A DNA stretch of 64,000 nt from Octopus sinensis (taxonomy: Eukaryota). The DNA is taken from assembly GCF_006345805.1 (NCBI RefSeq), contig NC_042998.1, positions 57,288,001 to 57,352,000 of the forward strand, written 5' to 3'. Shown one piece after another: positions 3,441 to 46,500 of the stretch. The position numbers and the translations under genes are program-made. The first letter of the stretch is position 1. Every line of letters starts with the position of its first letter. The notes beneath the pieces were generated by a model, which saw only the letters and a list, made by a program, of their open reading frames with translations, ran no database searches and had not been told where the DNA came from.

Positions 3441-6400
3441 TTAAATAGGTTCTTTCACTCGCAACATACTTGCTATAGACTTCCATCTTTTACGAAACAC
3501 ACTTTGCGACAGGCATTTCTTCTCCAGCGTTATTTTCCGTTTCATGTGGAAAACGAAAAAGTCGATTAGCTCGAGACTGGAGATAAACATGCCTGTTGCA
3601 ATTCCTTTTACTCTCGTCTTCCACACTACTTCTTTCGCCATAGCAACTACCGAAAGAAAACAGGCTCGCTCCTCCCTATTCAGGAAGGTCGGCGGAACTA
3701 TCTTAATTACAGATTCGCTCGACAGTTGTACATTCTCGAATGCGACAGCAGGTGTTCGACATAAGTCCAGAGTTCAGTCACCTTGGGGCATTGCACAATC
3801 GCGTGCAGGACAGTTTCACTGTCCCTCTTACATCTTGCACAAACCGGCGAAGGTGCACACCCATGTCTAAAGAGCTTATCTCGAACCGGTAAAGCTCCTC
3901 TGTAACATTGCCAGGCCAGGGACTTTTGGTAATTATCCATAGGCCCCGGACCGAATGTTCTTTGGAACAGGCTGGCCAGTTGATTTTCGTCGAAGCCCAG
4001 AGTTTCTCCTAGGACGTCGTCACACTTAAACTCTACTAACCCTCTATAGAAGAACGCGGTAGTAGCCCCGCCACCGGCGTTGCCCGACTGGGAGAGAAGC
4101 ACGAGTGCCTGATAGCACTCTGCATGCCACATGCCCAACCTCGGTCTACACTTGATCCATGGGTCAGTTCGTTAAACGATGTGAACTGTGGAAATAACAG
4201 CTTGACAAACGGAGACCACACCTGCTCACCGTCCAGGTAAATCCAGAGGTGCCTAAGCCTGAGCGCATGTCTGCGCATTTTTAGCCACGGCATCCCTAAC
4301 CCACCGTTCAGCGGCTTTTGGCAGCAAATAGAGCGCCTTACAAGAGGTCTGCTGCCCCTCCACAAAAAGCGAAAGAGCATGCGTTCCAGTTTGTTCAGCC
4401 ACGAATCGGGGCAAGGCACTACGGTTAGGCGGTAAGTGATTACAGAGGCGATAAACACTTCTGCAACCTCCGCCTTCCCTTTCAAGGACAGATTCCGTTC
4501 AGACCATGTCTGAGTTAGGAGAGCCACCTTTCTCGCCACCTCGCTCCAATTCTTCTCTATCTGGAGATCTGGACCTAACCAAATCCCAAGCATTTTCACC
4601 GGTCCTTCCGTCCAACGTCCTACGACGCTGTCGGAAGACATCGACTTGCCCCTCCAGGTGCCGAGTTGCAAGCCGACCGATTTATCCCGGTTGACTTTCG
4701 CTCCTGCCACCGCTTCGTAGTCCCTTAAGGCCTCACCCACCCACTGTAGGTGCTCGACTCGGGAAACGATGACGGTGATGTCGTCCGCATACGCCGAAGC
4801 TGACTTTCCGCACCCTAGATCTTGCGGGGTGCCTCTCATAGTTTCCAACCTCCTCAGCAACGGCTCGAGGGCCAAAACGTAGAGAAGCGGGAAGAGAGGA
4901 CACCCTTGACGTACCGAACGTTCAATGCTGAACGGCTCCGAAAGGAAACCATTTACCCGAACTACCGATTCGATGTTGCTGTATAAAGCGATGATCCATC
5001 CGCGGAAGGTCGGGCCGAAGCCAGCCGCCGCGAGGACCGCCGCCAGATACTGATGGTCCACCCTATCAAACGCTTTCGATTGGTCCAAGTGGACCATAGC
5101 CCCACCCTTGCCAGGAATCCTATTTACCCTTTCTAAGGCATAGCGTAGAAAGTGGAGATTGTCGTGGATGGTCCTTCCAGGGATGGCGCAAGTTTGCGCC
5201 TCGCCAACAAGTTCACCCACGACCCTCGCCAACCTTTTTGCTAAGACCTTGGCCAAGATCTTCAACTCTGCGTTAAGCAGAGTGATAGGCCGGAAATTAT
5301 CAATTAAATCCCCCTTGTTTGGGTCCTTTCTTAACAACGCTACCACCCCTTAGGAATTCTCCCGTTCTGCTGCCAGTTGGTGTACACGCATGCAAGTAGG
5401 TGCCCAAACAAATCTGGCATGCTACTATAGAGTTCGTAAGGCAGACCATCGAGTCCCGGCGATTTGTCCCCGCCGCATTCTGCCAACATATCCTCGACTT
5501 CTTTGGCTGTGATCGGCGCCTCACAAGATTCCGCGTCCGGCCCCGATAGACGCGACGAACCGGCTAGGAAGTCTGCGAGCTTCTCCCCGCGCTCCAGCTC
5601 GCCGCTCCTCCCGAATAGCTGGGCGAAATGATCATGAAACACCTTGCACATCTCCTCGGGTTCGTTTACTAATCGACCATTTGGGCCCGTCAAGGATCGA
5701 ATGGTTGAGTTGTTGCCACGCTGGCCCTCTACCACCCGGGCCCATCCGGCTGCGTTGATCCCTTCCTGTCTCATTGCACGGATCTTAGCCCTAATAATGC
5801 ACCCTTCATGTTTAGCTTGGAGATGTTGGACTAGTGCTAACCTCGCCGCTAACACTTTCGATGCACAGCCTGACCTCATTGCCTCCTCTATAGCCTTAAC
5901 TAGTTCCTTTTCTACTTTGTTTCTAGCACTAGCTAGTTCTTTGCTAAACCTAATTGACTCAAATTTGATGGCTCTTTTCAGGGCGTACCACCATTTATTG
6001 TTGATAATGGATCCGGTTAACGCCCTCATTACTAATTGTTTAATCCGATTCCTGTAGGCTTCACAGTCCAATAGTGACTTGTTTAGCTTCCAGTAGCCGG
6101 TACCTCGTCTACACATGCTATCTATGTCGAGCGTACAGGTCACTAATTTGTGATCGCTGTAGCTGACGATATGGTGTTGTGGACAGCTAAGTATTTTCTT
6201 ATCTTTCCTTCTAGTTATGATTCTATCGATATAAGATCTGGACGACCCGTCGTTTCTTGCCCAGGTCCACTCTGGAATGTCTGGATGGTCCAGTCTGAAT
6301 CTATCTGCCAATTCGAAACGACTTAGCATATCGTTGAGGTGAGGTAATCCCCTCGTATTCTTTCTTGAGCCAACATAATCTACGCTTGCATCGCAAATTA
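3441..6400 (-). pseudogene. L1/Tx1 ORF2 (APE-RT-zinc finger), split by frameshifts into 5340-6329, 4036-5346, 3707-4138 and 3441-3641
   Basis: KSPGLDGLPYELY, NFRPITLLNAELKILAKVLAKRL, LDQSKAFDRVDH, SVRQGCPL, AYADD and CARCKRDSETVLHAIVQC. Confidence 0.95.
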
Positions 6401-6408
6401 TGTTGAAG

Positions 6409-7386
6409 TCACCACTTTACCACTTGGCACGTCGAACACGTTAGTATTGCTTGGTGACTCTCGCCACATTTATAGCATCTCGGTTTTCTTCCCTCGACTA
6501 TTACCATCAAGGTGGTATCTCCAATGGTGAGGGTGCTTGGCAATTTTTCCAAGTCCGAGGGGTTCGCTTGGATCACAAGCTCTAAGTCCTGTCCATACCA
6601 GGTTGTGGGGCGATATCTTTTAGACTGAAGAATGGCAATTTCTTCCTCTTTGCCTAAGAGAATCGCTGCTGTTATGAAGTCCATATCTATTTCGGGCGGA
6701 ATGTCCGTAACCGTTATTCTACTAGTTCTCATTCCTAAATAAAATGGTAAAAGAACTACCTCTTCCGACTTCAACGTTCTTGTTGAATGTTCCCTAGCTA
6801 TTTCTTCGCTAGGGAAACGCACCTCTACCGTGCCGAAGCGACTACCCCTTGTTATATAACTTGTTTGTTGCCGTATCGGCCTCAAACATTTTTCAATGGC
6901 TTCTCTCTGTACGAAGTCAATTTTCTTATTTTTGACATTATAAGTCTTGTAAATTACAGTTTTTCTCTCCGTCGCGTAAATTAATTCACTGGGAGGGAAC
7001 AACTTCACATTATCACCTTCTTTTTTTAATAAACTTTGGTACTTCTTTAATCCTTCTTTGTTAATAACGATGTTTTCACAGGGGCGAGTTGCTGCACTCG
7101 CAAACTTTATTTTTGCCTTTTCTTGTCGTTTACTAGCTTCGCCAGACATATTGTCGTCTGCTTTTGTGACGCTCGCGTGAGACGTCTCTTTACTTCTACC
7201 TTCCTCCTCCCGCATTTTCTCCTTCATGCCTTCAAACAAATTTTCAACGTTTTCCTCCGACTCGGAGGAGACTGGTTGCAAATTCATGTCTTTTTCGTCA
7301 CTTCCCCCTTGAAACAAGGGGGAAAAAAACAGCAGAACTCTGCTGCAATAGCAGAAAAGAAGTGGCCTCGACGACCAAAACAGCAA
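6409..7386 (-). pseudogene. L1/Tx1 ORF1 (gag-like nucleic-acid-binding protein), C-terminally truncated
   Basis: 325-aa ORF ending ...VEGRKPRCYKCGESH. It is homologous to the ORF1 relics at 54585-55770 and 59460-60240 (shared GTVEVxF...VxLPxYLG.R.SR..V..IPPE). Confidence 0.85.
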
Positions 7387-27332: not shown

Positions 27333-28287
27333 TAATTTTAAAAAAGAATATAGCTGTCGCTCAACAAATACATGTGGTTTCTTGTCTTTTGAGTGCTTGT
27401 AAATTGATTCAATGGAAATAGAATTGTTAAAATGAAATCGTGAGAGAGTAATGCTTAACGCTGGATACAGAATATATATTTTAGTTGTAGTAGGTTCTGT
27501 CGAAATTCGTTATACGATTTTTATGTGATTGAAACTAACAGAAACTGAAAGCAGAAATCGGATTCTGTTGTGGGCACATTACAAATTTAAATGAAACAAT
27601 TACACTATAGATTACAAATCATGTCTACGACCGCATTCAAAGATAACGTATGGTTTCTTCTTCCAATATTCTTGAGAGAACAAATGATAAGGGAGTAGAG
27701 AGAGTAGAGAGAGAAAGGAGAAAGAAGATAATGAATGGGAAGGTTAGGTAGAAGTTAGCAACATTGTTTTAAGATGCTTGTAAAGAATACGCCTAGATAT
27801 ACTGTTCCCGAAAATAAAAACTTGGGAAGGTAGTACTGGAGCACCATTGATCGTAGACCGGCTCAGGTGGTCCAAAAGCAGTCCTAGATAGATGATGGAT
27901 CAGGCTCATATACGCATTGCACCATCTGTTCTATTGAACCTGCGGATATAACATTTTATTCGATCTCTATCAGTATTGTCGGGTCTGTAACAGATATCTG
28001 TTGGTGACGTTTTCTTCTGATTCTTTTATTCTCCGCCTCTCTCCGTCCACCTCTTTCCTTTCTATTTTTCTCCTTTGTTTCAGTCATTAAAATGTAAAAA
28101 CATTGTTAGGACACTACGTTGAAGGGCTAAGTAGATGAAATCAGTCTATTTATACCGAACCACTAAATTGTCAAGCGGTGAAACACAAACACAAAGACAC
28201 AGCTCTATAGTTAAGAGATGAGAAATTATGTACATTATTTACATTATTTACCTTTGAAGGATATTTGTCCTCATCTTGTTTGTTGTT

Positions 28288-28333
28288 AACACAACGTTTC
28301 GGCTGGTATACCCTCCAGCCTTCGTCAGGTGTC
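28288..28333 (-). ncRNA. Minimal type I hammerhead ribozyme (PLE type)
   Basis: The minus strand reads GACAC-CTGACGA-A-GGCTGG-agggtata-CCAGCC-GAAACGTT-GTGTT. Stem I is GACAC/GTGTT, stem II is 6 bp, stem III is the palindrome ACGT (dimer-dependent), and the triplet is GUU. Confidence 0.7.
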
Positions 28334-28384
28334 ATGGGGGAAATTTCAAACCTAGGTTCTCATTCCTAAGATATTTTTCGATGC

Positions 28385-28431
<47 letters not shown>

Positions 28432-28728
28432 GGGAATCTGGGGTTAGTAACCCGCGCTCTTAACCACTACGCCATATGCCCGTCGGCAATTATGGAGTGA
28501 ATTTTAGGTCTTATAATATAATTAGGGATTAGATTTATAAACCCTAAAATTTATTCCATAATTGCCCATGCGTATATAGCGTAGTGGTTAAAAATGCGGG
28601 CTACTAACCCCAAAATGCCGAGTTCGATACAAGCAGTGTCCCGAATGATAATAATAATAATAATAATAATAATAGCAGCATCGAAAAATACCCTAGGAAT
28701 GAGAATCCAGGTTCGAAATTTCCCCCTA

Positions 28729-28769
28729 GACACCTGATGAAGGTTGGAGGGTATATCAGCCGAAACGTT
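28729..28769 (+). ncRNA. Hammerhead ribozyme, partly decayed copy
   Basis: GACAC-CTGATGA-A-GGTTGG-agggtata-TCAGCC-GAAACGTT. Stem II is kept by G-U wobbles, and the 3' strand of stem I is replaced by a T run. Confidence 0.55.
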
Positions 28770-28877
28770 TTTTTAGAAACAAGATGAGGACAAATATCCG
28801 TCGAATGTAAATAATGTAAATAACAAATACAAAGGTGCACCACACATAAATACGTTCACACATGCACATACATATAT

Positions 28878-29025: not shown

Positions 29026-29867
29026 TACGAAGTGGTATCAAAAGCTCTCGTACTGGTTCTGTTACGCGCCAACAGATAGTAGCTCACGATTGCGTATGCA
29101 GTGAGAGCTAGCAGTGACCTTCACGAGGCAGTGTACCGAGTGACATCGTTGTGTTTGTTTCACAAGCTGTAAAACTGGCGTTTTTGCTATTTTTTCATAG
29201 ACAGGAGGAAGGAACAAAGAGTTAACTTGAAACTTTGCGTTAAACTTGGGTAGTATGCTACAGAGACATTGAGCATGCTTCGGCAAGCTTACGGCAACGA
29301 GGCAATGGGTCGTACGCGATGTTTCGAGTGGCACGGGCTCTTCAAAAGCGGACGATAAGCAATCTGGAAGACCTGTCACGAGTGTCATCCCAGGAAGAAA
29401 ATTCATCAGCTTGTGCATGGATATCGTCAGGAGAAAACAATCAACGACATTTTGGAGTGTTTGAAGGAGGAGGACATTTGGCGGAAGCGACCGGATCTGT
29501 GGAATGCGAAGAATTGATTCTTCACAACGATAATGCACTCAGTAACCGGGCTCTCCTCACTCGTGAGTTTCTCGCCAAAAACAACATAGTATCGCTTCTG
29601 TACCCGCCCTATTCACCAAATTTAGCACCTATGGACCTCCATCTCTTCCTGAAGATGAATAAGCAGCTCAAAGGCCCCCGTTTTCACACCGTTATTGATA
29701 TCCAGAGCGAATCGCAGACGGTCCTCGACTCGCTTACAGAACACGACTCCCAGGGCGGGTTCCGAATATGGTAGGAACGCTGGGGCCGGTGCATTCTGCG
29801 CAGGGTGACTATTTCGAAAGCGATAATCTTAAAACTTAAGCAACTAACCTTTCGATACTACTTCGTA
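29026..29867 (+). mobile_element. Mariner DNA transposon, internally deleted, with TIRs and TA TSD
   Basis: TIRs TACGAAGTGGTATCAAAAAG / CTTTCGATACTACTTCGTA, flanked by TA. N-terminal EQRVNLKLCVKLG...CFEWH..FKSGR, and C-terminal HNDNA...YPPYSPNLAPMDLHLF. Confidence 0.92.
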
Positions 29868-34797: not shown

Positions 34798-34852
<55 letters not shown>

Positions 34853-34890
34853 AGCTGTATATATCTGTACATATATATGTGTATATATAT

Positions 34891-34935
<45 letters not shown>

Positions 34936-35009
34936 TATATATATACACACACACATATATATATACACACACACACATATATATATACACACACATATAT
35001 ATATACACA

Positions 35010-35068
<59 letters not shown>

Positions 35069-35073
35069 GTATA
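34797..35073. repeat. Compound (TA)n/(CA)n microsatellite immediately upstream of the hammerhead array
   Basis: Visible tandem runs. Confidence 0.95.
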
Positions 35074-35148
35074 TAATTTATATATAGAGGGCATTATACA
35101 TACATGCCAGAAGGCATTATACATACATGCCACACGCTAAGAGGGACA

Positions 35149-35189
35149 CTGATGAATACGTAAGTATGAAATCACTGTGATACAGGTCT
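35149..35189 (+). ncRNA. Hammerhead copy 1 (5' strand of stem I missing)
   Basis: Core, stem II and stem III are intact; the upstream AGGCCTG is replaced by the inverted segment. Confidence 0.75.
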
Positions 35190-35621
35190 ATATTTTTTTA
35201 AATGTCTTACTTTGAAAAATTGCATTCGGTGGGATTAGTAATATTTTTGGTAGAAATGACTAATTGTCCCTCTTAGCGTGTGGCATGTATGTATAATGCC
35301 TTCTGGCATGTATGTATAATGCCCTCTATATATAAATTAATATGTTCAATAAGAAATAATTATTTTCGAAATTTTTTCTCTTATGAGGTTTTCACGCTAT
35401 CTACCTGACAATTTCTTGTTAAGTTTTCCTTATTAAGTAGTTGTCCTTAATTGCTAAATTTTTATTCCGAAAAAACTTTTCCTCTCCCGAAATGCAATTC
35501 GTAAAAGTTTGCCATTTATCCGGATGTAATATATGTAACTCACCCATGTGCTTCGTTGATGTTGATCAGTTAGCTGATCGGCTTAAGCGGGGCAGGGTCG
35601 TTGTTTATTTATAATACATTC

Positions 35622-35668
35622 AGGCTGCTGATGAATACGTAAGTATGAAATCACTGTGATACAGGTCT
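35622..35668 (+). ncRNA. Hammerhead copy 2 (stem I variant AGGCTG)
   Basis: AGGCTG-CTGATGA-ATAC-GTAA-GTAT-GAAA-TCACTGTGA-TA-CAGGTCT; predicted cleavage after 35661. Confidence 0.85.
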
Positions 35669-36099
35669 ATATGTTTTTAATGTCTTACTTTGAAAAATTG
35701 CATTCGGTGGGATTAGTAATATTTTTGGTAGAAATGACTAATTGTCCCTCTTAGCGTGTGGCATGTATGTATAATGCCTTCTGGCATGTATGTATAATGC
35801 CCTCTATATATAAATTAATATGTTCAATAAGAAATAATTATTTTCGAAATTTTTTCTCTTATGAGGTTTTCACGCTATCTACCTGACAATTTCTTGTTAA
35901 GTTTTCCTTATTAAGTAGTTGTCCTTAATTGCTAAATTTTTATTCCGAAAAAACTTTTCCTCTCCCGAAATGCAATTCGTAAAAGTTTGCCATTTATCCG
36001 GATGTAATATATGTAACTCACCCATGTGCTTCGTTGATGTTGATCAGTTAGCTGATCGGCTTAAGCGGGGCAGGGTCGTTGTTTATTTATAATACATTC

Positions 36100-36147
36100 A
36101 GGCCTGCTGATGAATACGTAAGTATGAAATCACTGTGATACAGGTCT
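36100..36147 (+). ncRNA. Hammerhead copy 3 (complete type I)
   Basis: AGGCCTG-CTGATGA-ATAC-GTAA-GTAT-GAAA-TCACTGTGA-TA-CAGGTCT, with a 7-bp stem I containing one G-U; predicted cleavage after 36140. Confidence 0.92.
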
Positions 36148-36578
36148 ATATGTTTTTAAATGTCTTACTTTGAAAAATTGCATTCGGTGGGATTAGTAAT
36201 ATTTTTGGTAGAAATGACTAATTGTCCCTCTTAGCGTGTGGTATGTATGTATAATGCCTTCTGGCATGTATGTATATGCCCTCTATATATAAATTAATAT
36301 GTTCAATAAGAAATAATTATTTTCGAAATTTTTTCTCTTATGAGGTTTTCACGCTATCTACTGACAATTTCTTGTTAAGTTTTCCTTATTAAGTAGTTGT
36401 CCTTAATTGCTAAATTTTTATTCCGAAAAAACTTTTCCTCTCCCGAAATGCAATTCGTAAAAGTTTGCCATTTATCCGGATGTAATATATGTAATCTCAC
36501 CCATGTGCTTCGTTGATGTTGATCAGTTAGCTGATCGGCTTAAGCGGGGCAGGGTCGTTGTTTATTTATAATGCATTC

Positions 36579-36626
36579 AGGCCTGCTGATGAATACGTAA
36601 GTATGAAATCACTGTGATACAGGTCT
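36579..36626 (+). ncRNA. Hammerhead copy 4 (complete type I)
   Basis: Identical to copy 3; predicted cleavage after 36619. Confidence 0.92.
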
Positions 36627-37050
36627 ATATTTTTTAAAGTCTTACTTTGAAAAATTGCATTCGGTGGGATTAGTAATATTTTTGGTAGAAATGACTAATT
36701 GTCCCTCTAGCGTGTGGCATGTATGTATAATGCCTTCTGGCATGTAGTATAATGCCCTCTATATATAAATTAATATGTTCAATAAGAAATAATATTTTCG
36801 AAATTTTTCTCTTATGAGGTTTTCACGCTATCTACCTGACAATTTCTTGTTAAGTTTTCCTTATTAGTAGTTGTCCTTAATTGCTAAATTTTTATTCCGA
36901 AAAAACTTTTCCTCTCCGAAATGCAATCGTAAAAGTTTGCCATTTATCCGGATGTAATATATGTAAACTCACCCATGTGCTTCGTTGATGTTGATCAGTT
37001 AGCTGATCGGCTTAAGCGGGGCAGGGTCGTTGTTTATTTATAATACATTC

Positions 37051-37097
37051 AGGCTGCTGATGAATACGTAAGTATGAAATCACTGTGATACAGGTCT
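37051..37097 (+). ncRNA. Hammerhead copy 5 (stem I variant AGGCTG)
   Basis: As copy 2; predicted cleavage after 37090. Confidence 0.85.
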
Positions 37098-37525
37098 ATA
37101 TGTTTTTAAATGTCTTACTTTGAAAAATGCATTCGGTGGGATTAGTAATATTTTTGGTAGAAATGACTAATTGTCCCTCTTAGCGTGTGGTATGTATGTA
37201 TAATGCCTTCTGGCATGTATGTATAATGCCCTCTATATATAAATTAATATGTTCAATAAGAAATAATTATTTTCGAAATTTTTTCTCTTATGAGGTTTTC
37301 ACGCTATCTACCTGACAATTCTTGTTAAGTTTTCTTATTAAGTAGTTGTCCTTAATTGCTAAATTTTTATTCCGAAAAAACTTTTCCTCTCCCGAAATGC
37401 AATCGTAAAAGTTTGCCATTTATCCGGATGTAATATATGTAATCTCACCCATGTGCTTCGTTGATGTTGATCAGTTAGCTGATCGGCTTAAGCGGGGCAG
37501 GGTCGTTGTTATTTATAATGCATTC

Positions 37526-37573
37526 AGGCCTGCTGATGAATACGTAAGTATGAAATCACTGTGATACAGGTCT
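37526..37573 (+). ncRNA. Hammerhead copy 6 (complete type I)
   Basis: Identical to copy 3; predicted cleavage after 37566. Confidence 0.92.
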
Positions 37574-38539
37574 ATATTTTTTAAAGTCTTACTTTGAAAA
37601 ATTGCATTCGGTGGGATTAGTAATATTTTTGGTAGAAATGACTAATTGTCCCTCTTAGCGTGTGGCATGTATGTATAATGCCTTCTGGCATGTATGTATA
37701 ATGCCCTCTATATATAAATTAATATGTTCAATAAGAAATAATTATTTTCGAAATTTTTTCTCTTATGAGGTTTTCACGCTATCTACCTGACAATTTCTTG
37801 TTAAGTTTTCCTTATTAAGTAGTTGTCCTTAATTGCTAAATTTGTATATGTATATATATAGAGAGAGATAGGGAGAGGGAGAGAGAGAGGTGGATAGGTT
37901 GATAGATAAATAACCAGAGTCTACACACTTAAAATAACTGCACTTCAAGTGTACATACTTCAGATACATTAAACAAATGATGGAGGTTGGTCTCCTTTGT
38001 TGTATGCATTTCAAGCAGAACTAATCTAACATCACAAACTTAATGACATTCTCCGTCTATGAATCTTGCTCCTTTTTATAGTTTATTGCAATCTCCTCCG
38101 GCGTCTTTTGTCTCGTGTTTGCCTGAACAATAAAATCATTCACTTCACGTTTTTCTTCAGGTAAAAGTAAAGAGGAAGCGAAATTATTCATTATATTTTT
38201 CACATTCTTAATTTCGTTCTTTGCATATTGAACTGTTCGTGCTTTGCTGCCTCGTCAGATGAATCCCTAGACCTCAACTTAATATTCATGTTCTATATCG
38301 TTGAACCTTTTGGAATTAAAATCCACAATAATTTTATGCAGAAAATTTATTTTGAACGACGTTTAACATAAAATACCAGAACTGAATGATTAGCAGAATC
38401 GGTAGAGAATCGCTGAAAGTGCCTTGTATTATTTAATTACATCTATTACTAACAGAAAACAGTCCGAAAGTCGTTTTTTTTTTATTAGCGATAATGATAA
38501 TCCCTTCAACTAGATACACAGAACCTGAAATTTTGTATG

Positions 38540-40776: not shown

Positions 40777-41087
40777 GAATATGTGGATTTCACAAGCGGT
40801 CCCCAACAATCCCGCATATGGAGACATCCTGTTTGCCGCAGATTGTCCGCAGACGCAGGAACAGAACGACCGAGGAGCCGCCAGTTGCCGAAGCAGACTC
40901 TTCGAGGATTTTCACCAGAGCCCCGTTTGCCGGGTTGTGGCCCTAATACCACTCGGTGTCACACTAATCCGCCTTGGATGGCCCTACCAGGAACCGAAGT
41001 TCCCGACGGCATAGCTCTGACACTACCCGTTGCCAGCGTCCCCACGTTATGTACGTATGTATGTACGTATGTATGTATGTGTATATA

Positions 41088-41126
<39 letters not shown>

Positions 41127-41136
41127 TGTGTATATG

Positions 41137-41190
<54 letters not shown>

Positions 41191-41211
41191 CATATACACA
41201 GACTATATATA

Positions 41212-41269
<58 letters not shown>

Positions 41270-41577
41270 ATATATACACATACATACATACGTACATACA
41301 TACGTACATAACGTGGGGACGCTGGCAACGGGTAGTGTCAGAGCTATGCCGTCGGGAACTTCGGTTCCTGGTAGGGCCATCCAAGGCGGATTAGTGGTGA
41401 CACCGAGTGGTATTAGGGCCACAACCCGGCAACGGGGCTCTGGTGAAAATCCTCGAAGAGTCTGCTTCGGCAACTGGCGGCTCCTCGGTCGTTCTGTTCC
41501 TGCGTCTGCGGACAATCTGCGGCAAACAGGATGTCTCCATATGCGGATTGTTGGGGACCGCTTGTGAAATCCACATA
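40777..41577. repeat. Near-perfect inverted duplication with ~300-bp GC-rich arms (40777-41075 / 41290-41577) around a (TA)n spacer
   Basis: The arms are reverse complements differing essentially by single-base indels (CCCCGTTTGCC vs CCCCGTTGCC; GTCACACTA vs GTCACCACTA; AATCCCGC vs AATCCGC). Confidence 0.95.
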
Positions 41578-43574: not shown

Positions 43575-46500
43575 ATAATTTAGTTTTGGGGATTAATAGA
43601 TATGCGGGTATTCTATTTCAGGTAATACAAAAAATAACCTAATGAGTATATCCGAAACTAAACTCATGGTATCCATTTGCCCATCACAAAATAATACTTA
43701 ACGGACATAACCATTATATCATCAGGGTATATACTATACTTCCTTAATTATCTCCTACTTTAGTTACCACTAAATTATATAAGGCCGTATCATACGCCAT
43801 ATCATACGCCGTATTATTTGAAGAAGTTAAAGTCGTGTTGGACGCGAGGAAGTCTATTATAAAATATAAAGATAAACTATGGGCAAGAAAAGACACAAGA
43901 GATTGTTTTTATATACCCATGGGTGCCCCAGATTGTGCCCAGGTTACCGATCTTGTAGGTTTATATATCTTATCTGAAGTGGAAAGAGAATTTACGAATA
44001 TAGAGGGTGGTCTTTAAAGGGACGACCTATTACTTATAACCAGGAATTGTACCAATACCAATACGTCATTAGAACCCCTTAAGAAGAAAATGTACAAGTT
44101 ATTTAAGAATAATGGCCTAGGAATATCTATAGAGAATGCGCATTATGCAGTAAATTATCTAGACGTCAACCTTAATCTAGTCACTAATAAGAACCATCCA
44201 TTCCATAAGTTGAATGAAAATCTAAAGTATATTAGTTATTTTAGTAACCATCCTAGATCAATTAAAGAAGCTTTAATAGATAATATAGGCAAAAGAATAT
44301 CTAGGCTATCCTCAGATTATGACACTTTTAATATACATGCCCCATATTATAAAAAAGCATTAAAAGAAGCAGGATATAGCATTAATATAAAATCCTATAA
44401 TTATTACGAACGCGTTAATAATAATAAAATAAGTAATCCTAATAAAACTAATAATAATTCTAACAGTAAAAATATGAATAATGATGATACAAGATAATAT
44501 AACAAACTAAAAAAAGATAAAAATAATATAGTTGTTATTTATGATTACAATAATAATAGTAATATTGATAATGAGAATATGAGCAATAATAAGAAAGAGA
44601 GGAAACTGTACAAGCAGAGATGTAATATACCAAAGAACAACAATTTAATGCCGATGAGGTCTAATGATTATAATATAAAAAATAAAAAAAATAAAAAGGA
44701 TATTATATGGCTAATTATTCCGTATGGGGCTCAAGTGGTGACTAATATTATTAAGAAGACACTTAAAATTGTAAAAAATGGTTTTTAAAAAGGACAACAG
44801 TTATTCAAATATATTTTCCAATAAAACAATTAGAGTGGGATAGTCAACATCGAGAAATATAGATAATATTATTTCCTCTATAAATAATACGAAATTAAAT
44901 AATTATTTTAATAGCATAATAAATAATAGCTTTAGCAATAATATAACCGATAGTGATAAAAGTCTTAATCAACATATAGAAAAATGCTCATGTCGTGATA
45001 AGACTAAATGTAAGTTGTCTGATAACAGTAATATTAATAATATAATTAATAAATGTATAGTAAGCTCTAAGAGCAATAATAATGAAATTATAAATAAGGC
45101 TTATATTGGATCAAGAGCTAATGAAATTTAAAAAAGAATATCCCAACACTACCAGACCATCAAAAATCATAATTTAAGTTAGTCCACAGGCTTAAGTAAA
45201 TATGTATGGGAATTAAAATCTAGAAAAAAAGAGTACACCCTTAGGTGGAGTATGATAAGTAGAGCCCACTCCTATAATGTTGGGAATAAATTGTGTTTAT
45301 TATGCATAACAGAATTGATGAAACTACTACAGTTTAGAGATGGTTTATTAAACACATATGATGGACGTGAATGAAATGTTGGCACCGAAGTAATTTTACT
45401 TTCAATAAAATGAAATACTGAACCCCCTCTGAATCAAATATCCACATAATTTTATTTATACAGCCCTCGTATAGACTATATAAATAAATAAATGAATTAA
45501 ATATTACAAAAATCATATAATAACAAATTACATATATCTCTCAACATAGGTAAATTGAAGATAATAATAGAGGATAGTTTAAATTTAAACTATGCATAGG
45601 GTAATTGCCCCTCCCCCCTGGTACTAATCACTTATAAATTCCCATAGTTCCCCGCTATCTTCTTCCGCTAATTGCCATTTTGAAAAGTAATCCTGGTAAC
45701 AGCAAAAAAGGAAGATATATATTTGAATTTTTCTTAATATATTTCACATTTTTATTCTGAAGTATACTTTTATATCTTATAATTTGTATTTGACATTATA
45801 TACTTGATTTTACTAGGTTGATATATATATATACTAATTCATGTTTATAATGTATGATATATAAATTTTAATTTTTAATATTACAAAGTATAATTTTAAT
45901 TTTTAATTTTAATCTTTAATGCTTAATTTTATTTCTTATTTTTGAAAGGGATGTAAAATTAACATTATAATATTTGGAATAGAATGTGTTGGAATAATTG
46001 TAAGTCTGATGATTGCACATATGTATTTATATATGCATATATATACATGTGTGGAGGCGCAATGGTTAGGGCAGCGGACTCGCGGTCGTAGGATTGCGGT
46101 TTCGATTCCCAGACCGGGCGTTGTGAGTGTTTATTGAGCGAAAACACCTAAAAGCTCCACGAGGCTCCGGCAGGGGGTGGTGATCCCTGCTGTACTCTTT
46201 CACCACTCTTTCTCCGACTCTTTCTTCTGTTGGCCTGCTCGCTTAACCAGCGGGGTGGCGTCATTCGAAGGCTAAAACAATGCAAACGCATTGTGACCAG
46301 CGATGTGTAACAACATCTGATGGTCTGGTCGGTCACGTGATCACGTGATATATACATGTATACAATTGTGTGTATGTATATATTGAAATCTTCCAATCCT
46401 GAAACCCGTGTAGTTCCTTCATATTTAGATAATTTAGTAGTAACTACAGTACTAGATAATTAAAGAAGTATAGTATATAATCTGGTGGTATAATGGTTAT

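What the first reader, a model, noticed from the sequence alone, without database searches (positions are those of the whole stretch)
35149..37843. Tandem array of ~479-nt units each carrying a canonical hammerhead ribozyme: candidate cephalopod retrozyme
Seen: six copies, at regular spacing, of AGG(C)CTG-CTGATGA-ATAC-GTAA-GTAT-GAAA-TCACTGTGA-TA-CAGGTCT, with no ORF in the unit. All invariant hammerhead core bases are present (C3-U4-G5-A6-N7-G8-A9, G12-A13-A14-A15.1, U16.1, H17=A). Stem I is 7 bp, stem II is 4 bp capped by a GNRA (GUAA) loop, and stem III is the near-palindrome AUCAC-U-GUGAU. Established: minimal type I hammerheads with palindromic stem III in short tandem repeats define metazoan non-LTR retrozymes (and satellites such as newt Sat2 and Schistosoma Sm-alpha), which self-cleave, often as dimers, into monomers that circularise. 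Inference: a + strand transcript would be cut after 35182, 35661, 36140, 36619, 37090 and 37566 into ~479-nt monomers or circRNAs. That is larger than the roughly 170-400 nt I recall for animal retrozymes, and I do not know of this family being described.
Basis: partly seen in the sequence, partly recalled or inferred. Interest (0 to 1): 0.95.

Follow-up and report, generated by a model that had tools for sequence, protein, structure and literature searches.

The report
Hammerhead-ribozyme tandem repeat (retrozyme) in a cephalopod-like genome
A 2.8-kb insertion made of about 479-base non-coding repeats, each carrying a complete self-cutting hammerhead RNA motif, fits a known kind of animal mobile element (a non-LTR retrozyme) that is new for cephalopods but not a new kind of element.

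Summary
A 478-479-bp head-to-tail array (35149-37847, 5.7 copies, about 97% identical) carries six exact copies of a 41-nt string with the full type I hammerhead core, a 4-bp helix II capped by GUAA, and a near-palindromic helix III. There is no ORF above 57 aa.

Corrections:
- Only five copies are complete. Copy 1 lacks the 5' strand of helix I, because a 75-nt inverted piece of the unit (35074-35148) abuts CTGATGA.
- Two copies have a 1-nt shorter helix I.
- Rfam hammerhead models do not score the motif. My own descriptor does (3 perfect hits; null 0.02 per window).

A two-unit transcript folds, unconstrained, into the classical double hammerhead, whereas an isolated motif prefers an inactive fold. 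Dimer-dependent cleavage is therefore the likely mode.

The whole block sits in a (TA)n/(GA)n microsatellite between 12-nt direct repeats, and its ends are not at the cleavage site. This is the insertion pattern of Penelope-like elements (PLEs).

Best reading: a non-LTR retrozyme, probably mobilised by PLEs. A 479-nt unit is within published ranges. Expression, cleavage, circles and copy number elsewhere could not be tested.

Verdict: a new member of a known kind, of moderate interest.

The parts
34801..35073 (.). Left flank: (TA)n/(CA)n compound microsatellite, the presumed insertion target. Its last 12 nt (35062-35073, TGTATATGTATA) form the left copy of the candidate target-site duplication.
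   Evidence: TRF row 34801-35086; sequence; the 12-mer occurs only 3 times in the window.
35074..35148 (-). 75-nt inverted fragment of the repeat unit. It is the reverse complement of monomer positions 82-156 (counted from the cleavage site) and abuts C3 of the first CTGATGA.
   Evidence: Inverted repeats I1-I4: 99-100% complementary to 35265-35339, 35743-35817, 37172-37246 and 37647-37721; blastn; mapping to the monomer.
35149..35189 (+). Hammerhead copy 1, incomplete. Core, helix II, helix III and the 3' strand of helix I are present. The 5' strand of helix I is replaced by the inverted fragment, so self-cleavage after 35182 is not expected.
   Evidence: context and fold; not found by the descriptor.
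35622..35668 (+). Hammerhead copy 2. Helix I 5' strand is AGGCTG (6 nt, giving a bulged G). Predicted cut after 35661.
36100..36147 (+). Hammerhead copy 3, perfect: AGGCCUG / CUGAUGA / AUAC-GUAA-GUAU / GAA / AUCAC-U-GUGAU / A / CAGGUCU. Predicted cut after 36140.
36579..36626 (+). Hammerhead copy 4, perfect. Predicted cut after 36619.
37051..37097 (+). Hammerhead copy 5. Helix I 5' strand is AGGCTG. Predicted cut after 37090.
37526..37573 (+). Hammerhead copy 6, perfect. Predicted cut after 37566.
35149..37847 (+). The direct array: 5.66 units of 471-479 bp. Predicted full monomers between competent sites are 35662-36140 (479), 36141-36619 (479), 36620-37090 (471) and 37091-37566 (476). The array starts at monomer position 446 and ends at position 278, so neither end is at a cleavage site. 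By shared variants the unit types run A A B C B C.
35281..35327 (+). Internal feature of each unit: two tandem 23-nt hairpin-forming copies (TGGCATGTATGTATAATGCCYTC). They recur at 35759, 36239, 36715, 37188 and 37663, and in inverted form at 35086-35132.
   Evidence: TRF rows with period 22-23; paired in the monomer MFE.
37843..37890 (.). Right flank: TGTATATGTATA (37843-37854, right copy of the candidate target-site duplication) followed by a (TA)n(GA)n microsatellite.

Best explanation
The block 35074-37847 is one insertion of a non-autonomous, non-coding retroelement of the metazoan non-LTR retrozyme kind.

Proposed cycle. Only the DNA anatomy is shown here; the rest is inferred from the published retrozyme model.
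1. The + strand of the array is transcribed as a multimer.
2. Neighbouring hammerheads pair through their near-palindromic helix III to form double hammerheads. [quoted passage not shown]
3. A host RtcB-type tRNA ligase circularises the monomers into a highly base-paired circular RNA.
4. A reverse transcriptase/endonuclease of a Penelope-like element (PLE) copies a circular or unprocessed multimeric RNA into multi-unit cDNA at a nick in a (TA)n microsatellite. This leaves an array whose ends are not at the cleavage site, a short inverted 5' fragment from second-strand (twin) priming or template switching, and a target-site duplication of about 12 nt.

Later DNA-level duplication of a two-unit block probably changed the copy number.
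For: Shown:
- Exact hammerhead strings once per unit, with all core positions present. Chance expectation is 0 and 0.02 per window for a full motif.
- No ORF above 57 aa. GC is 33%. The units are in head-to-tail tandem.
- An unconstrained MFE fold of a transcript spanning two motifs (36080-36660) gives exactly the double hammerhead. It has a 10-bp trans helix III with one U.U, and helix I swapped between copies.
- Cofolding two 48-mers gives the same structure at -31.1 kcal/mol, against 2 x -12.1 for separate monomers.
- The monomer RNA is unusually structured: linear -132.3 kcal/mol, z = -6.3. Structure is stronger on the + strand: circular z = -5.9, against -2.7 for the complement.
- Insertion signature: 12-nt direct repeats TGTATATGTATA exactly at both ends, with only 3 occurrences in 64 kb. 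Both flanks are microsatellite. A 75-nt, 100% inverted 5' fragment is present. The array phase starts at monomer position 446 and ends at position 278.
- The unit is not otherwise present in the window.

Literature:
- Non-LTR retrozymes are defined as type I hammerheads in short, low-GC tandem repeats without LTR, PBS or PPT, with target-site duplications longer than 4 bp. They are expressed as circles, and weak-helix-III motifs cut as dimers (PMC7229834, PMC7761336).
- PLE insertions form partial tandems, often have an inverted 5'-truncated copy at the 5' end, and prefer microsatellites such as (TA)n (PMC8557442).
- Retrozymes are phylogenetically tied to the pseudo-LTRs (pLTRs) of PLEs (10.64898/2026.07.22.740005).

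Context: a degraded reverse-transcriptase-like ORF with a weak GIY-YIG match lies at 43835-45380. A PLE-type minimal hammerhead lies at 28297-28328.
Against: - No Rfam hammerhead model matches, even at E<=10 on 81 nt. I had no positive control for that tool.
- There is no comparative evidence. No related sequence was found in any accessible collection, so there is no covariation.
- Within the array, the 48-nt motif has 1 variable column where 2.4 are expected from the unit-wide rate. That is not significant.
- The 10.1-11.1 pair is A-U, not the usual G-C (from memory, the G-C pair helps bind a metal ion). Helix II is only 4 bp, mostly A-U.
- In isolation the motif prefers a non-hammerhead fold: -12.1 against -9.7 kcal/mol.
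- No loop-loop tertiary contact can be identified.
- The flanking 12-mer equals (TGTATA)2, so it could be pre-existing microsatellite rather than a duplication.
- Shared variants (units 3 and 5, units 4 and 6) show DNA-level duplication. A single rolling-circle cDNA does not explain them.
- About three quarters of unit differences are 1-nt indels in short runs. This may be long-read assembly error, and the inverted junction could be an assembly artefact too.
- Only one locus was seen. Transcription was not shown.
Confidence: 0.7

Rival explanations
1. The array is a locally amplified satellite. A single pseudo-LTR of a Penelope-like element (PLE), or a retrozyme monomer, landed here and grew by unequal crossing-over or replication slippage. 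The hammerhead is a passenger relic. The locus is neither a source of circular RNA nor the product of multimeric cDNA integration.
For: - Variant sharing between units 3 and 5 and between units 4 and 6 (pattern A A B C B C) is a signature of DNA-level two-unit duplication.
- The 2026 preprint (10.64898/2026.07.22.740005) explicitly proposes local amplification of PLE terminal sequence by unequal crossover.
- No expression data are available.
- Rfam models do not recognise the motif.
Against: - All six cores are intact and identical.
- The block has sharp ends in arbitrary phase, with flanking 12-nt repeats and an inverted 5' piece. These are features of an insertion event, not of slippage.
- The + strand RNA structure is strong and strand-biased.
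- The double-hammerhead fold is the unconstrained MFE.
- This rival and the best explanation are not exclusive. Insertion followed by local amplification is likely.
Confidence: 0.15
2. The locus is part of an autonomous Penelope-like element (PLE): tandem pseudo-LTRs whose coding body has been lost or lies elsewhere. It would not be a separate non-autonomous family.
For: - The architecture is PLE-like: partial tandem, inverted 5' fragment and microsatellite target (PMC8557442).
- Hammerheads sit in the pseudo-LTRs of PLEs (PMC6155905, PMC7761336).
Against: - No reverse transcriptase or endonuclease ORF lies in or next to the array.
- The unit has no similarity to the probable PLE remnant at 43.8-45.4 kb or its flanks.
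- PLE hammerheads are described as minimal, lacking helix III (PMC6155905). This motif has a 4-5-bp helix III.
- Five and a half uniform units are more than a pseudo-LTR pair.
Confidence: 0.08
3. The hammerhead-like string is a chance or non-catalytic motif in an ordinary minisatellite.
For: - No Rfam hit.
- An A-U pair at positions 10.1-11.1.
- A weak helix II.
- The isolated motif misfolds.
Against: - A full motif is expected 0.02 times per 64 kb on both strands.
- All 11 invariant core bases, A15.1-U16.1, H17 = A and three correctly placed helices coincide.
- The motif lies in exactly the genomic setting where hammerheads are known (PMC7229834).
- The dimer fold is the MFE.
Confidence: 0.03
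4. The unit is a Pol III-driven SINE of the Schistosoma Sm-alpha type: a tRNA-derived head plus a hammerhead, arranged in tandem.
For: - Sm-alpha is a non-autonomous element with a type I hammerhead (PMC6155905).
- A SINE-like element with a tRNA-like head (judged by eye only) and a minimal hammerhead exists elsewhere in the window, at 28235-28823.
Against: - ARAGORN finds no tRNA-like gene in the window.
- Rfam at E<=10 shows no tRNA, 5S or 7SL match in the array.
- There is no A-rich tail.
- The units are strictly head to tail.
Confidence: 0.03

Closest known systems
Metazoan non-LTR retrozymes (Cervera & de la Pena 2020, PMC7229834): coral Acropora, mussel Mytilus, axolotl
   Same: - One type I hammerhead per unit in head-to-tail repeats of a few hundred bp.
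- GC well below 45%.
- No ORF, LTR, PBS or PPT.
- The predicted monomer RNA is highly self-paired.
- Flanking direct repeats are longer than 4 bp.
   Different: - The unit (479 bp) is at the upper end of the 150-450 bp quoted there, though within the 51-972 bp of the 2026 preprint.
- No recognisable loop 1-loop 2 tertiary contact.
- A-U at positions 10.1-11.1.
- Helix III is a 5+5 near-palindrome, which makes the double hammerhead the MFE.
- The host is a cephalopod-like genome. I found no retrozyme report for that group in the searchable library.
- Expression and circles were not shown here.
Newt satellite 2 and axolotl hammerheads (dimer-dependent type I hammerheads)
   Same: - Tandem repeat of about 330-350 bp with a type I hammerhead.
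- The monomeric form is poorly active and two neighbouring copies form an extended helix III (PMC6155905, PMC7229834).
- The same behaviour is predicted here.
   Different: - The amphibian helix III is 1-2 bp with a palindromic tetraloop, and those motifs keep loop-loop contacts.
- Here helix III could form a 4-bp hairpin on its own.
- There is no sequence similarity.
[quoted passage not shown] 2017, cited through PMC7761336)
   Same: - Type I topology, tandem copies and proposed dimer action.
- The insertion architecture of this locus is that of PLEs: partial tandem, inverted 5' piece and microsatellite target (PMC8557442).
   Different: - PLE motifs usually lack helix III and lie next to a reverse transcriptase/GIY-YIG ORF.
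- This motif has a real helix III and there is no ORF.
- A better example of the PLE type in this window is the motif at 28297-28328 (-).
Plant LTR retrozymes (PMC4918200)
   Same: Non-autonomous elements bounded by hammerheads, processed to circular RNA and mobilised by a retrotransposon's enzymes.
   Different: The plant elements have type III hammerheads, LTRs, PBS and PPT, 4-bp target-site duplications, GC above 55% and a size of 600-1000 nt. None of these is seen here.

Membership tests
Hammerhead ribozyme, type I | Conserved core C3-U4-G5-A6-N7-G8-A9, G12-A13-A14, A15.1-U16.1, and H17 not G | tested here: met
   All positions are present and identical in six copies; H17 = A.
Hammerhead ribozyme, type I | Three helices around the core, with helices II and III closed by loops and helix I open | tested here: met
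   The descriptor finds 3 perfect motifs (7/4/4 bp); the null is 0.02 per window. The hammerhead fold scores -9.7 kcal/mol. Two further copies have a 6-nt helix I strand. Copy 1 lacks that strand.
Hammerhead ribozyme, type I | Match to the Rfam hammerhead covariance models (RF00163 and its clan) | tested here: not met
   No hit at gathering score on the window. No hit at E<=10 on 2.9 kb or on 81 nt. No positive control was available.
Hammerhead ribozyme, type I | Tertiary contact between loop 2 and a loop or bulge in helix I (the 'canonical' natural form) | tested here: inconclusive
   Loop 2 is GUAA. Helix I is 7 bp, followed by a 2x2 internal loop and 4 more bp in the extended fold. No known contact pattern could be recognised.
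Hammerhead ribozyme, type I | Mg2+-dependent self-cleavage at the H17 phosphodiester bond | not testable with these tools
   Needs in vitro transcription of monomer and dimer constructs.
Metazoan non-LTR retrozyme | Type I hammerhead in every unit of a head-to-tail tandem repeat of a few hundred bp | tested here: met
   Units are 471-479 bp; five of six motifs are complete. Published ranges are 150-450 bp (PMC7229834) and 51-972 bp (10.64898/2026.07.22.740005).
Metazoan non-LTR retrozyme | Low GC (below 45-50%) and no coding capacity | tested here: met
   GC is 0.33. The longest ORF is 57 aa with a TTG start, and it has no homologue in 5.8 billion proteins.
Metazoan non-LTR retrozyme | Target-site duplication longer than 4 bp, when present | tested here: inconclusive
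   TGTATATGTATA lies at 35062-35073 and 37843-37854, with 3 occurrences in the window. It equals (TGTATA)2 inside a microsatellite, so pre-existing repeat cannot be excluded.
Metazoan non-LTR retrozyme | Multiple dispersed loci in the genome (mobility) | not testable with these tools
   There is one locus in the 64-kb window. No match was found in metagenome, viral or prokaryote collections. The source genome is not available.
Metazoan non-LTR retrozyme | Expression as linear and circular monomer RNA | not testable with these tools
   No RNA data. Only structure predictions are available.
Metazoan non-LTR retrozyme | Co-occurrence with Penelope-like elements (PLEs) in the same genome | tested here: inconclusive
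   A degraded ORF at 43835-45380 (+) belongs to a large family (1483 relatives). Full-length members show FDIxxFYPSI, YRDDGL and a C-terminal Y..V..YxG..FK.R..H. Pfam gives only weak GIY-YIG (E 0.002-0.005) and RVT_1 (0.019) matches. Assignment to the Hydra clade of PLEs rests on memory and on the description in PMC8557442.
Autonomous Penelope-like element (PLE) | Reverse transcriptase plus GIY-YIG ORF between the terminal repeats | tested here: not met
   No such ORF lies in or adjacent to 35074-37847.
Autonomous Penelope-like element (PLE) | Insertion architecture: partial tandem, inverted 5'-truncated copy, microsatellite target | tested here: met
   compared with the description in PMC8557442.
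tRNA-derived SINE with hammerhead (Sm-alpha type) | tRNA-like Pol III head in the unit | tested here: not met
   ARAGORN finds 0 genes. Rfam at E<=10 shows no tRNA-like match in the array.

The most novel reading that the evidence does not exclude
The locus may be a young, nearly unmutated integration product of an undescribed cephalopod retrozyme family. Its junctions would record how retrozymes integrate: multi-unit cDNA in arbitrary phase, a 5' inverted fragment from second-strand priming, a target-site duplication of about 12 nt, and a (TA)n target. That would be direct structural evidence that non-LTR retrozymes are inserted by the endonuclease and reverse transcriptase of a Penelope-like element (PLE). 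A further possibility is that read-through transcripts from the left flank contain a perfect 75-bp RNA hairpin (35074-35339). In a cephalopod this could be a substrate for ADAR editing or small-RNA production.
Probability: 0.25. Interest if true: 0.55.

Novelty: new member of a known kind. Interest (0 to 1): 0.4.

Why it matters
If active, the element would add cephalopods to the animals that make abundant ribozyme-processed circular RNAs. It would supply a natural circle scaffold of about 479 nt whose hammerhead is predicted to work only as a dimer.

[quoted passage not shown] The finding does not change what is known about the kind of element.

Tried and rejected
- Rfam cmscan at gathering score and at E<=10 on 2.9 kb and 81 nt gave no hammerhead family. 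The only matches were chance miRNA or snoRNA hits on microsatellite. I therefore used my own descriptor with a simulated null.
- I looked for relatives for covariation and found none. Exact and gapped hammerhead patterns were scanned in JGI metagenomes, IMG/VR and prokaryote genomes. The 57-aa unit peptide was searched against 5.8 billion proteins. Four unit ORFs were looked up by exact sequence. No comparative test of the stems was possible.
- Within-array conservation is not informative: 1 variable column in the motif, where 2.4 are expected.
- I tried to confirm the element at 43.8-45.4 kb as a Penelope-like element with Pfam on its pieces and on full-length relatives and with PDB sequence and profile searches. 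Only weak GIY-YIG and RVT_1 matches came up.
- An exact look-up of the LINE ORF to name the species found nothing. The host is inferred only from the best named homologues.
- Rejected: a tRNA-derived SINE; a coding gene; an infectious viroid-like or deltavirus-like RNA. For the last, the hammerhead is on one strand only, the element is integrated with flanking repeats, and there is no ORF.
Full report
**Observation**

The region is a true tandem array. Tandem Repeats Finder reports 35149-37847 with period 478, 5.7 copies, 97% matches and score 5182. The 41-nt string from CTGATGA to CAGGTCT is present six times without a mismatch, at 35149, 35628, 36107, 36586, 37057 and 37533 on the + strand, and nowhere else. 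No shuffle produced a match.

Reading the sequence gives AGGCCUG / CUGAUGA / AUAC-GUAA-GUAU / GAA / AUCAC-U-GUGAU / A / CAGGUCU. This has every invariant hammerhead position. Helix II and helix III are closed and helix I is open, which is type I topology. The cleavage triplet is AUA.

A descriptor that I wrote finds three perfect motifs (36100, 36579, 37526) and none on the other strand. It found 0.02 per window in 100 first-order Markov simulations of the window.

Units are 479, 479, 479, 471 and 476 bp plus a 315-bp partial unit. GC is 33%. The longest ORF is 57 aa with a TTG start, and it has no relative among 5.8 billion proteins.

- The first copy is not a complete hammerhead. The bases before its CTGATGA are GAGGGACA, which cannot pair with CAGGUCU. 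They belong to a 75-nt segment (35074-35148) that is a 100% reverse complement of a stretch inside the unit (35265-35339 and its equivalents).
- Copies 2 and 5 have AGGCTG instead of AGGCCTG, giving a 6-bp helix I with a bulged G.
- Five cut sites are therefore plausible, not six. The full monomers would be 35662-36140, 36141-36619, 36620-37090 and 37091-37566.
Rfam 15 gives no hammerhead match at gathering score, nor at E<=10 on 2.9 kb or on an 81-nt query. I had no positive control. The field normally finds such short variants with descriptors rather than covariance models (methods in PMC7229834, PMC8557442). Even so, this counts against a straightforward family assignment.

**How the ribozyme would work**

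- An isolated 48-mer prefers a fold in which UGAU of the core pairs with AUCA of helix III (-12.1 kcal/mol). The hammerhead fold scores -9.7 kcal/mol.
- Two 48-mers cofold into a double hammerhead at -31.1 kcal/mol.
- A natural transcript spanning two adjacent motifs (36080-36660) adopts the double hammerhead as its unconstrained minimum-energy structure. Helix III is a 10-bp intermolecular-type duplex with one U.U. Each helix I is formed between the 5' strand of one copy and the 3' strand of the other.
- This is the geometry described for newt and avocado sunblotch viroid (ASBVd) hammerheads, and for axolotl retrozymes that cut efficiently only as dimers (PMC6155905, PMC7229834).
- The monomer RNA is much more structured than shuffles: z = -6.3 linear. 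As a circle, z = -5.9 on the + strand against -2.7 on the complement. This agrees with the highly self-paired circles described for retrozymes (PMC7761336).
- Weak points: A10.1-U11.1 instead of the usual G-C (from memory, the G-C pair contributes to a metal site), a 4-bp AU-rich helix II, and no recognisable loop-loop contact.

**The locus as an insertion**

- The block lies in a compound microsatellite, with (TA)n/(CA)n on the left and (TA)n(GA)n on the right.
- The 12-mer TGTATATGTATA ends the left flank (35062-35073) and begins the right flank (37843-37854). It occurs only once more in the window. It is a candidate target-site duplication. The caveat is that it equals (TGTATA)2 and could be pre-existing repeat.
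- In monomer coordinates counted from the cleavage site, the direct array begins at position 446 (C3 of the core) and ends at position 278. The inverted piece is positions 82-156.
- Ends in arbitrary phase mean the template was not a processed linear monomer. It was a circle or an uncut multimer, as the retrozyme model proposes (PMC7229834, PMC7761336).
- Partial tandems, an inverted 5'-truncated copy at the 5' end, and a preference for (TA)n or other microsatellites are the published hallmarks of insertions by Penelope-like elements (PLEs) (PMC8557442).
- A 2026 preprint ties animal retrozymes phylogenetically to the pseudo-LTRs of PLEs (10.64898/2026.07.22.740005).
- Both the outer end of the inverted piece (...TAAATTA) and the 3' end of the array (...TAAATTT) are AU-rich. 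I infer priming by microhomology on the TA-rich target. This step is inference.

**History after, or before, insertion**

- Units 3 and 5 share substitutions, and so do units 4 and 6, giving the pattern A A B C B C. At least one two-unit duplication happened at the DNA level, here or in the master copy.
- About three quarters of the variable columns are single-base indels in short runs, mostly private to units 4 and 5. That is unusual for real mutation and may reflect long-read assembly error.
- Within-array conservation of the motif (1 variable column where 2.4 are expected) carries no weight.

**Context**

- The window's LINE (RVT_1 and zf-RVT) has its best named relatives in Argonauta hians (66% identity) and Acanthosepion pharaonis. 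A cephalopod, probably octopod-like, host is therefore plausible.
- About 6 kb downstream of the array, a degraded ORF (43835-45380, +) belongs to a large unannotated family (1483 relatives). Full-length members of about 700-900 aa show the reverse-transcriptase-like motifs FDIxxFYPSI and YRDDGL, and a C-terminal Y..V..YxG..FK.R..H block. Pfam gives only weak GIY-YIG and RVT_1 matches.
- That ORF fits the description of the Hydra clade of PLEs: short, single ORF, C-terminal endonuclease, (TA)n targets, present in molluscs (PMC8557442). I could not verify the assignment. It shares no DNA similarity with the array.
- A separate PLE-type minimal hammerhead sits in a SINE-like element arranged as a head-to-head inverted pair at 28235-28823.

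**Comparison and novelty**

The element meets the testable defining features of a metazoan non-LTR retrozyme. Those features are one type I hammerhead per unit, head-to-tail units of a few hundred bp, low GC, no ORF or LTR, and a long candidate target-site duplication.

The unit size is not exceptional. Published ranges are 150-450 bp for repeats, with circles 'from 150 to >1000 nt' for the class as a whole (PMC7229834), and 51-972 bp for consensus lengths (the preprint).

Full-text searches found no paper describing hammerhead retrozymes in cephalopods. Molluscs and 'most metazoan phyla' are already covered by the published concept.

I rate it a new member of a known kind, with interest 0.4. 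The most useful aspect is the well-preserved junction architecture, which bears on the PLE-mobilisation hypothesis.

**Not testable here**

Transcription, cleavage, circularisation, genome-wide copy number and covariation could not be tested. No related sequence was found in any accessible collection.

Noticed in passing
window 28235-28823: A head-to-head inverted pair (arms 81-94% alike) of a SINE-like element of about 290 nt. By eye it has a tRNA-like head, though neither ARAGORN nor Rfam calls one. It also has an internal (ATA)n and a hammerhead-like core. The minus-strand copy (core 28297-28328) reads UGACAC/CUGACGA-A/GGCUGG-AGGGUAUA-CCAGCC/GAA/ACGU/U/GUGUUA. That is a minimal hammerhead of the Penelope-like-element type, with a 1-bp helix III inside the palindrome ACGU. 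In the plus-strand copy (28734-28765) the 3' strand of helix I is destroyed.
   Followed up: partly
window 43835-45380 (+): A degraded ORF, broken by stops and a frameshift. It has reverse-transcriptase-like motifs (an IPMGAPDCAQ block, a stop codon followed by RDD at the YRDD position, and YLDVNLNL) and a C-terminal block with a weak GIY-YIG match (E = 0.005). It belongs to a family of about 1500 unannotated proteins. It is probably a Penelope-like element of the Hydra type. No hammerhead core is left in its flanks.
   Followed up: partly
window 40780-41577: A near-perfect large palindrome (arms 98-100% complementary, e.g. 40812-40927 with 41431-41546) centred on a (TA)n tract at about 41180. 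With the two other inverted structures in this window, it suggests either a common biological process at TA microsatellites or palindromic assembly artefacts.
   Followed up: no
window 3707-7386 (-): A LINE-type retrotransposon with a nearly open reading frame. It has a 325-aa upstream ORF, a 329-aa ORF, and then RVT_1 and zf-RVT domains. Its closest named relative is a hypothetical protein of Argonauta hians (66% identity).
   Followed up: partly
window 29319-29774 (+): A fragment of a mariner/Tc1-like DDE_3 transposase (Pfam E = 5e-4, below the curated cut-off).
   Followed up: no
window 35074-35339: The inverted fragment and its partner in unit 1 would form a perfect 75-bp RNA hairpin with a 116-nt loop that contains the first, incomplete hammerhead. 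This would occur in any transcript entering from the left flank. It is a potential substrate for ADAR editing or small-RNA production.
   Followed up: no
window 35149-37847: About three quarters of the differences between units are single-base deletions in short homopolymer or dinucleotide runs, concentrated in units 4 and 5. This is more typical of long-read consensus error than of mutation.
   Followed up: partly
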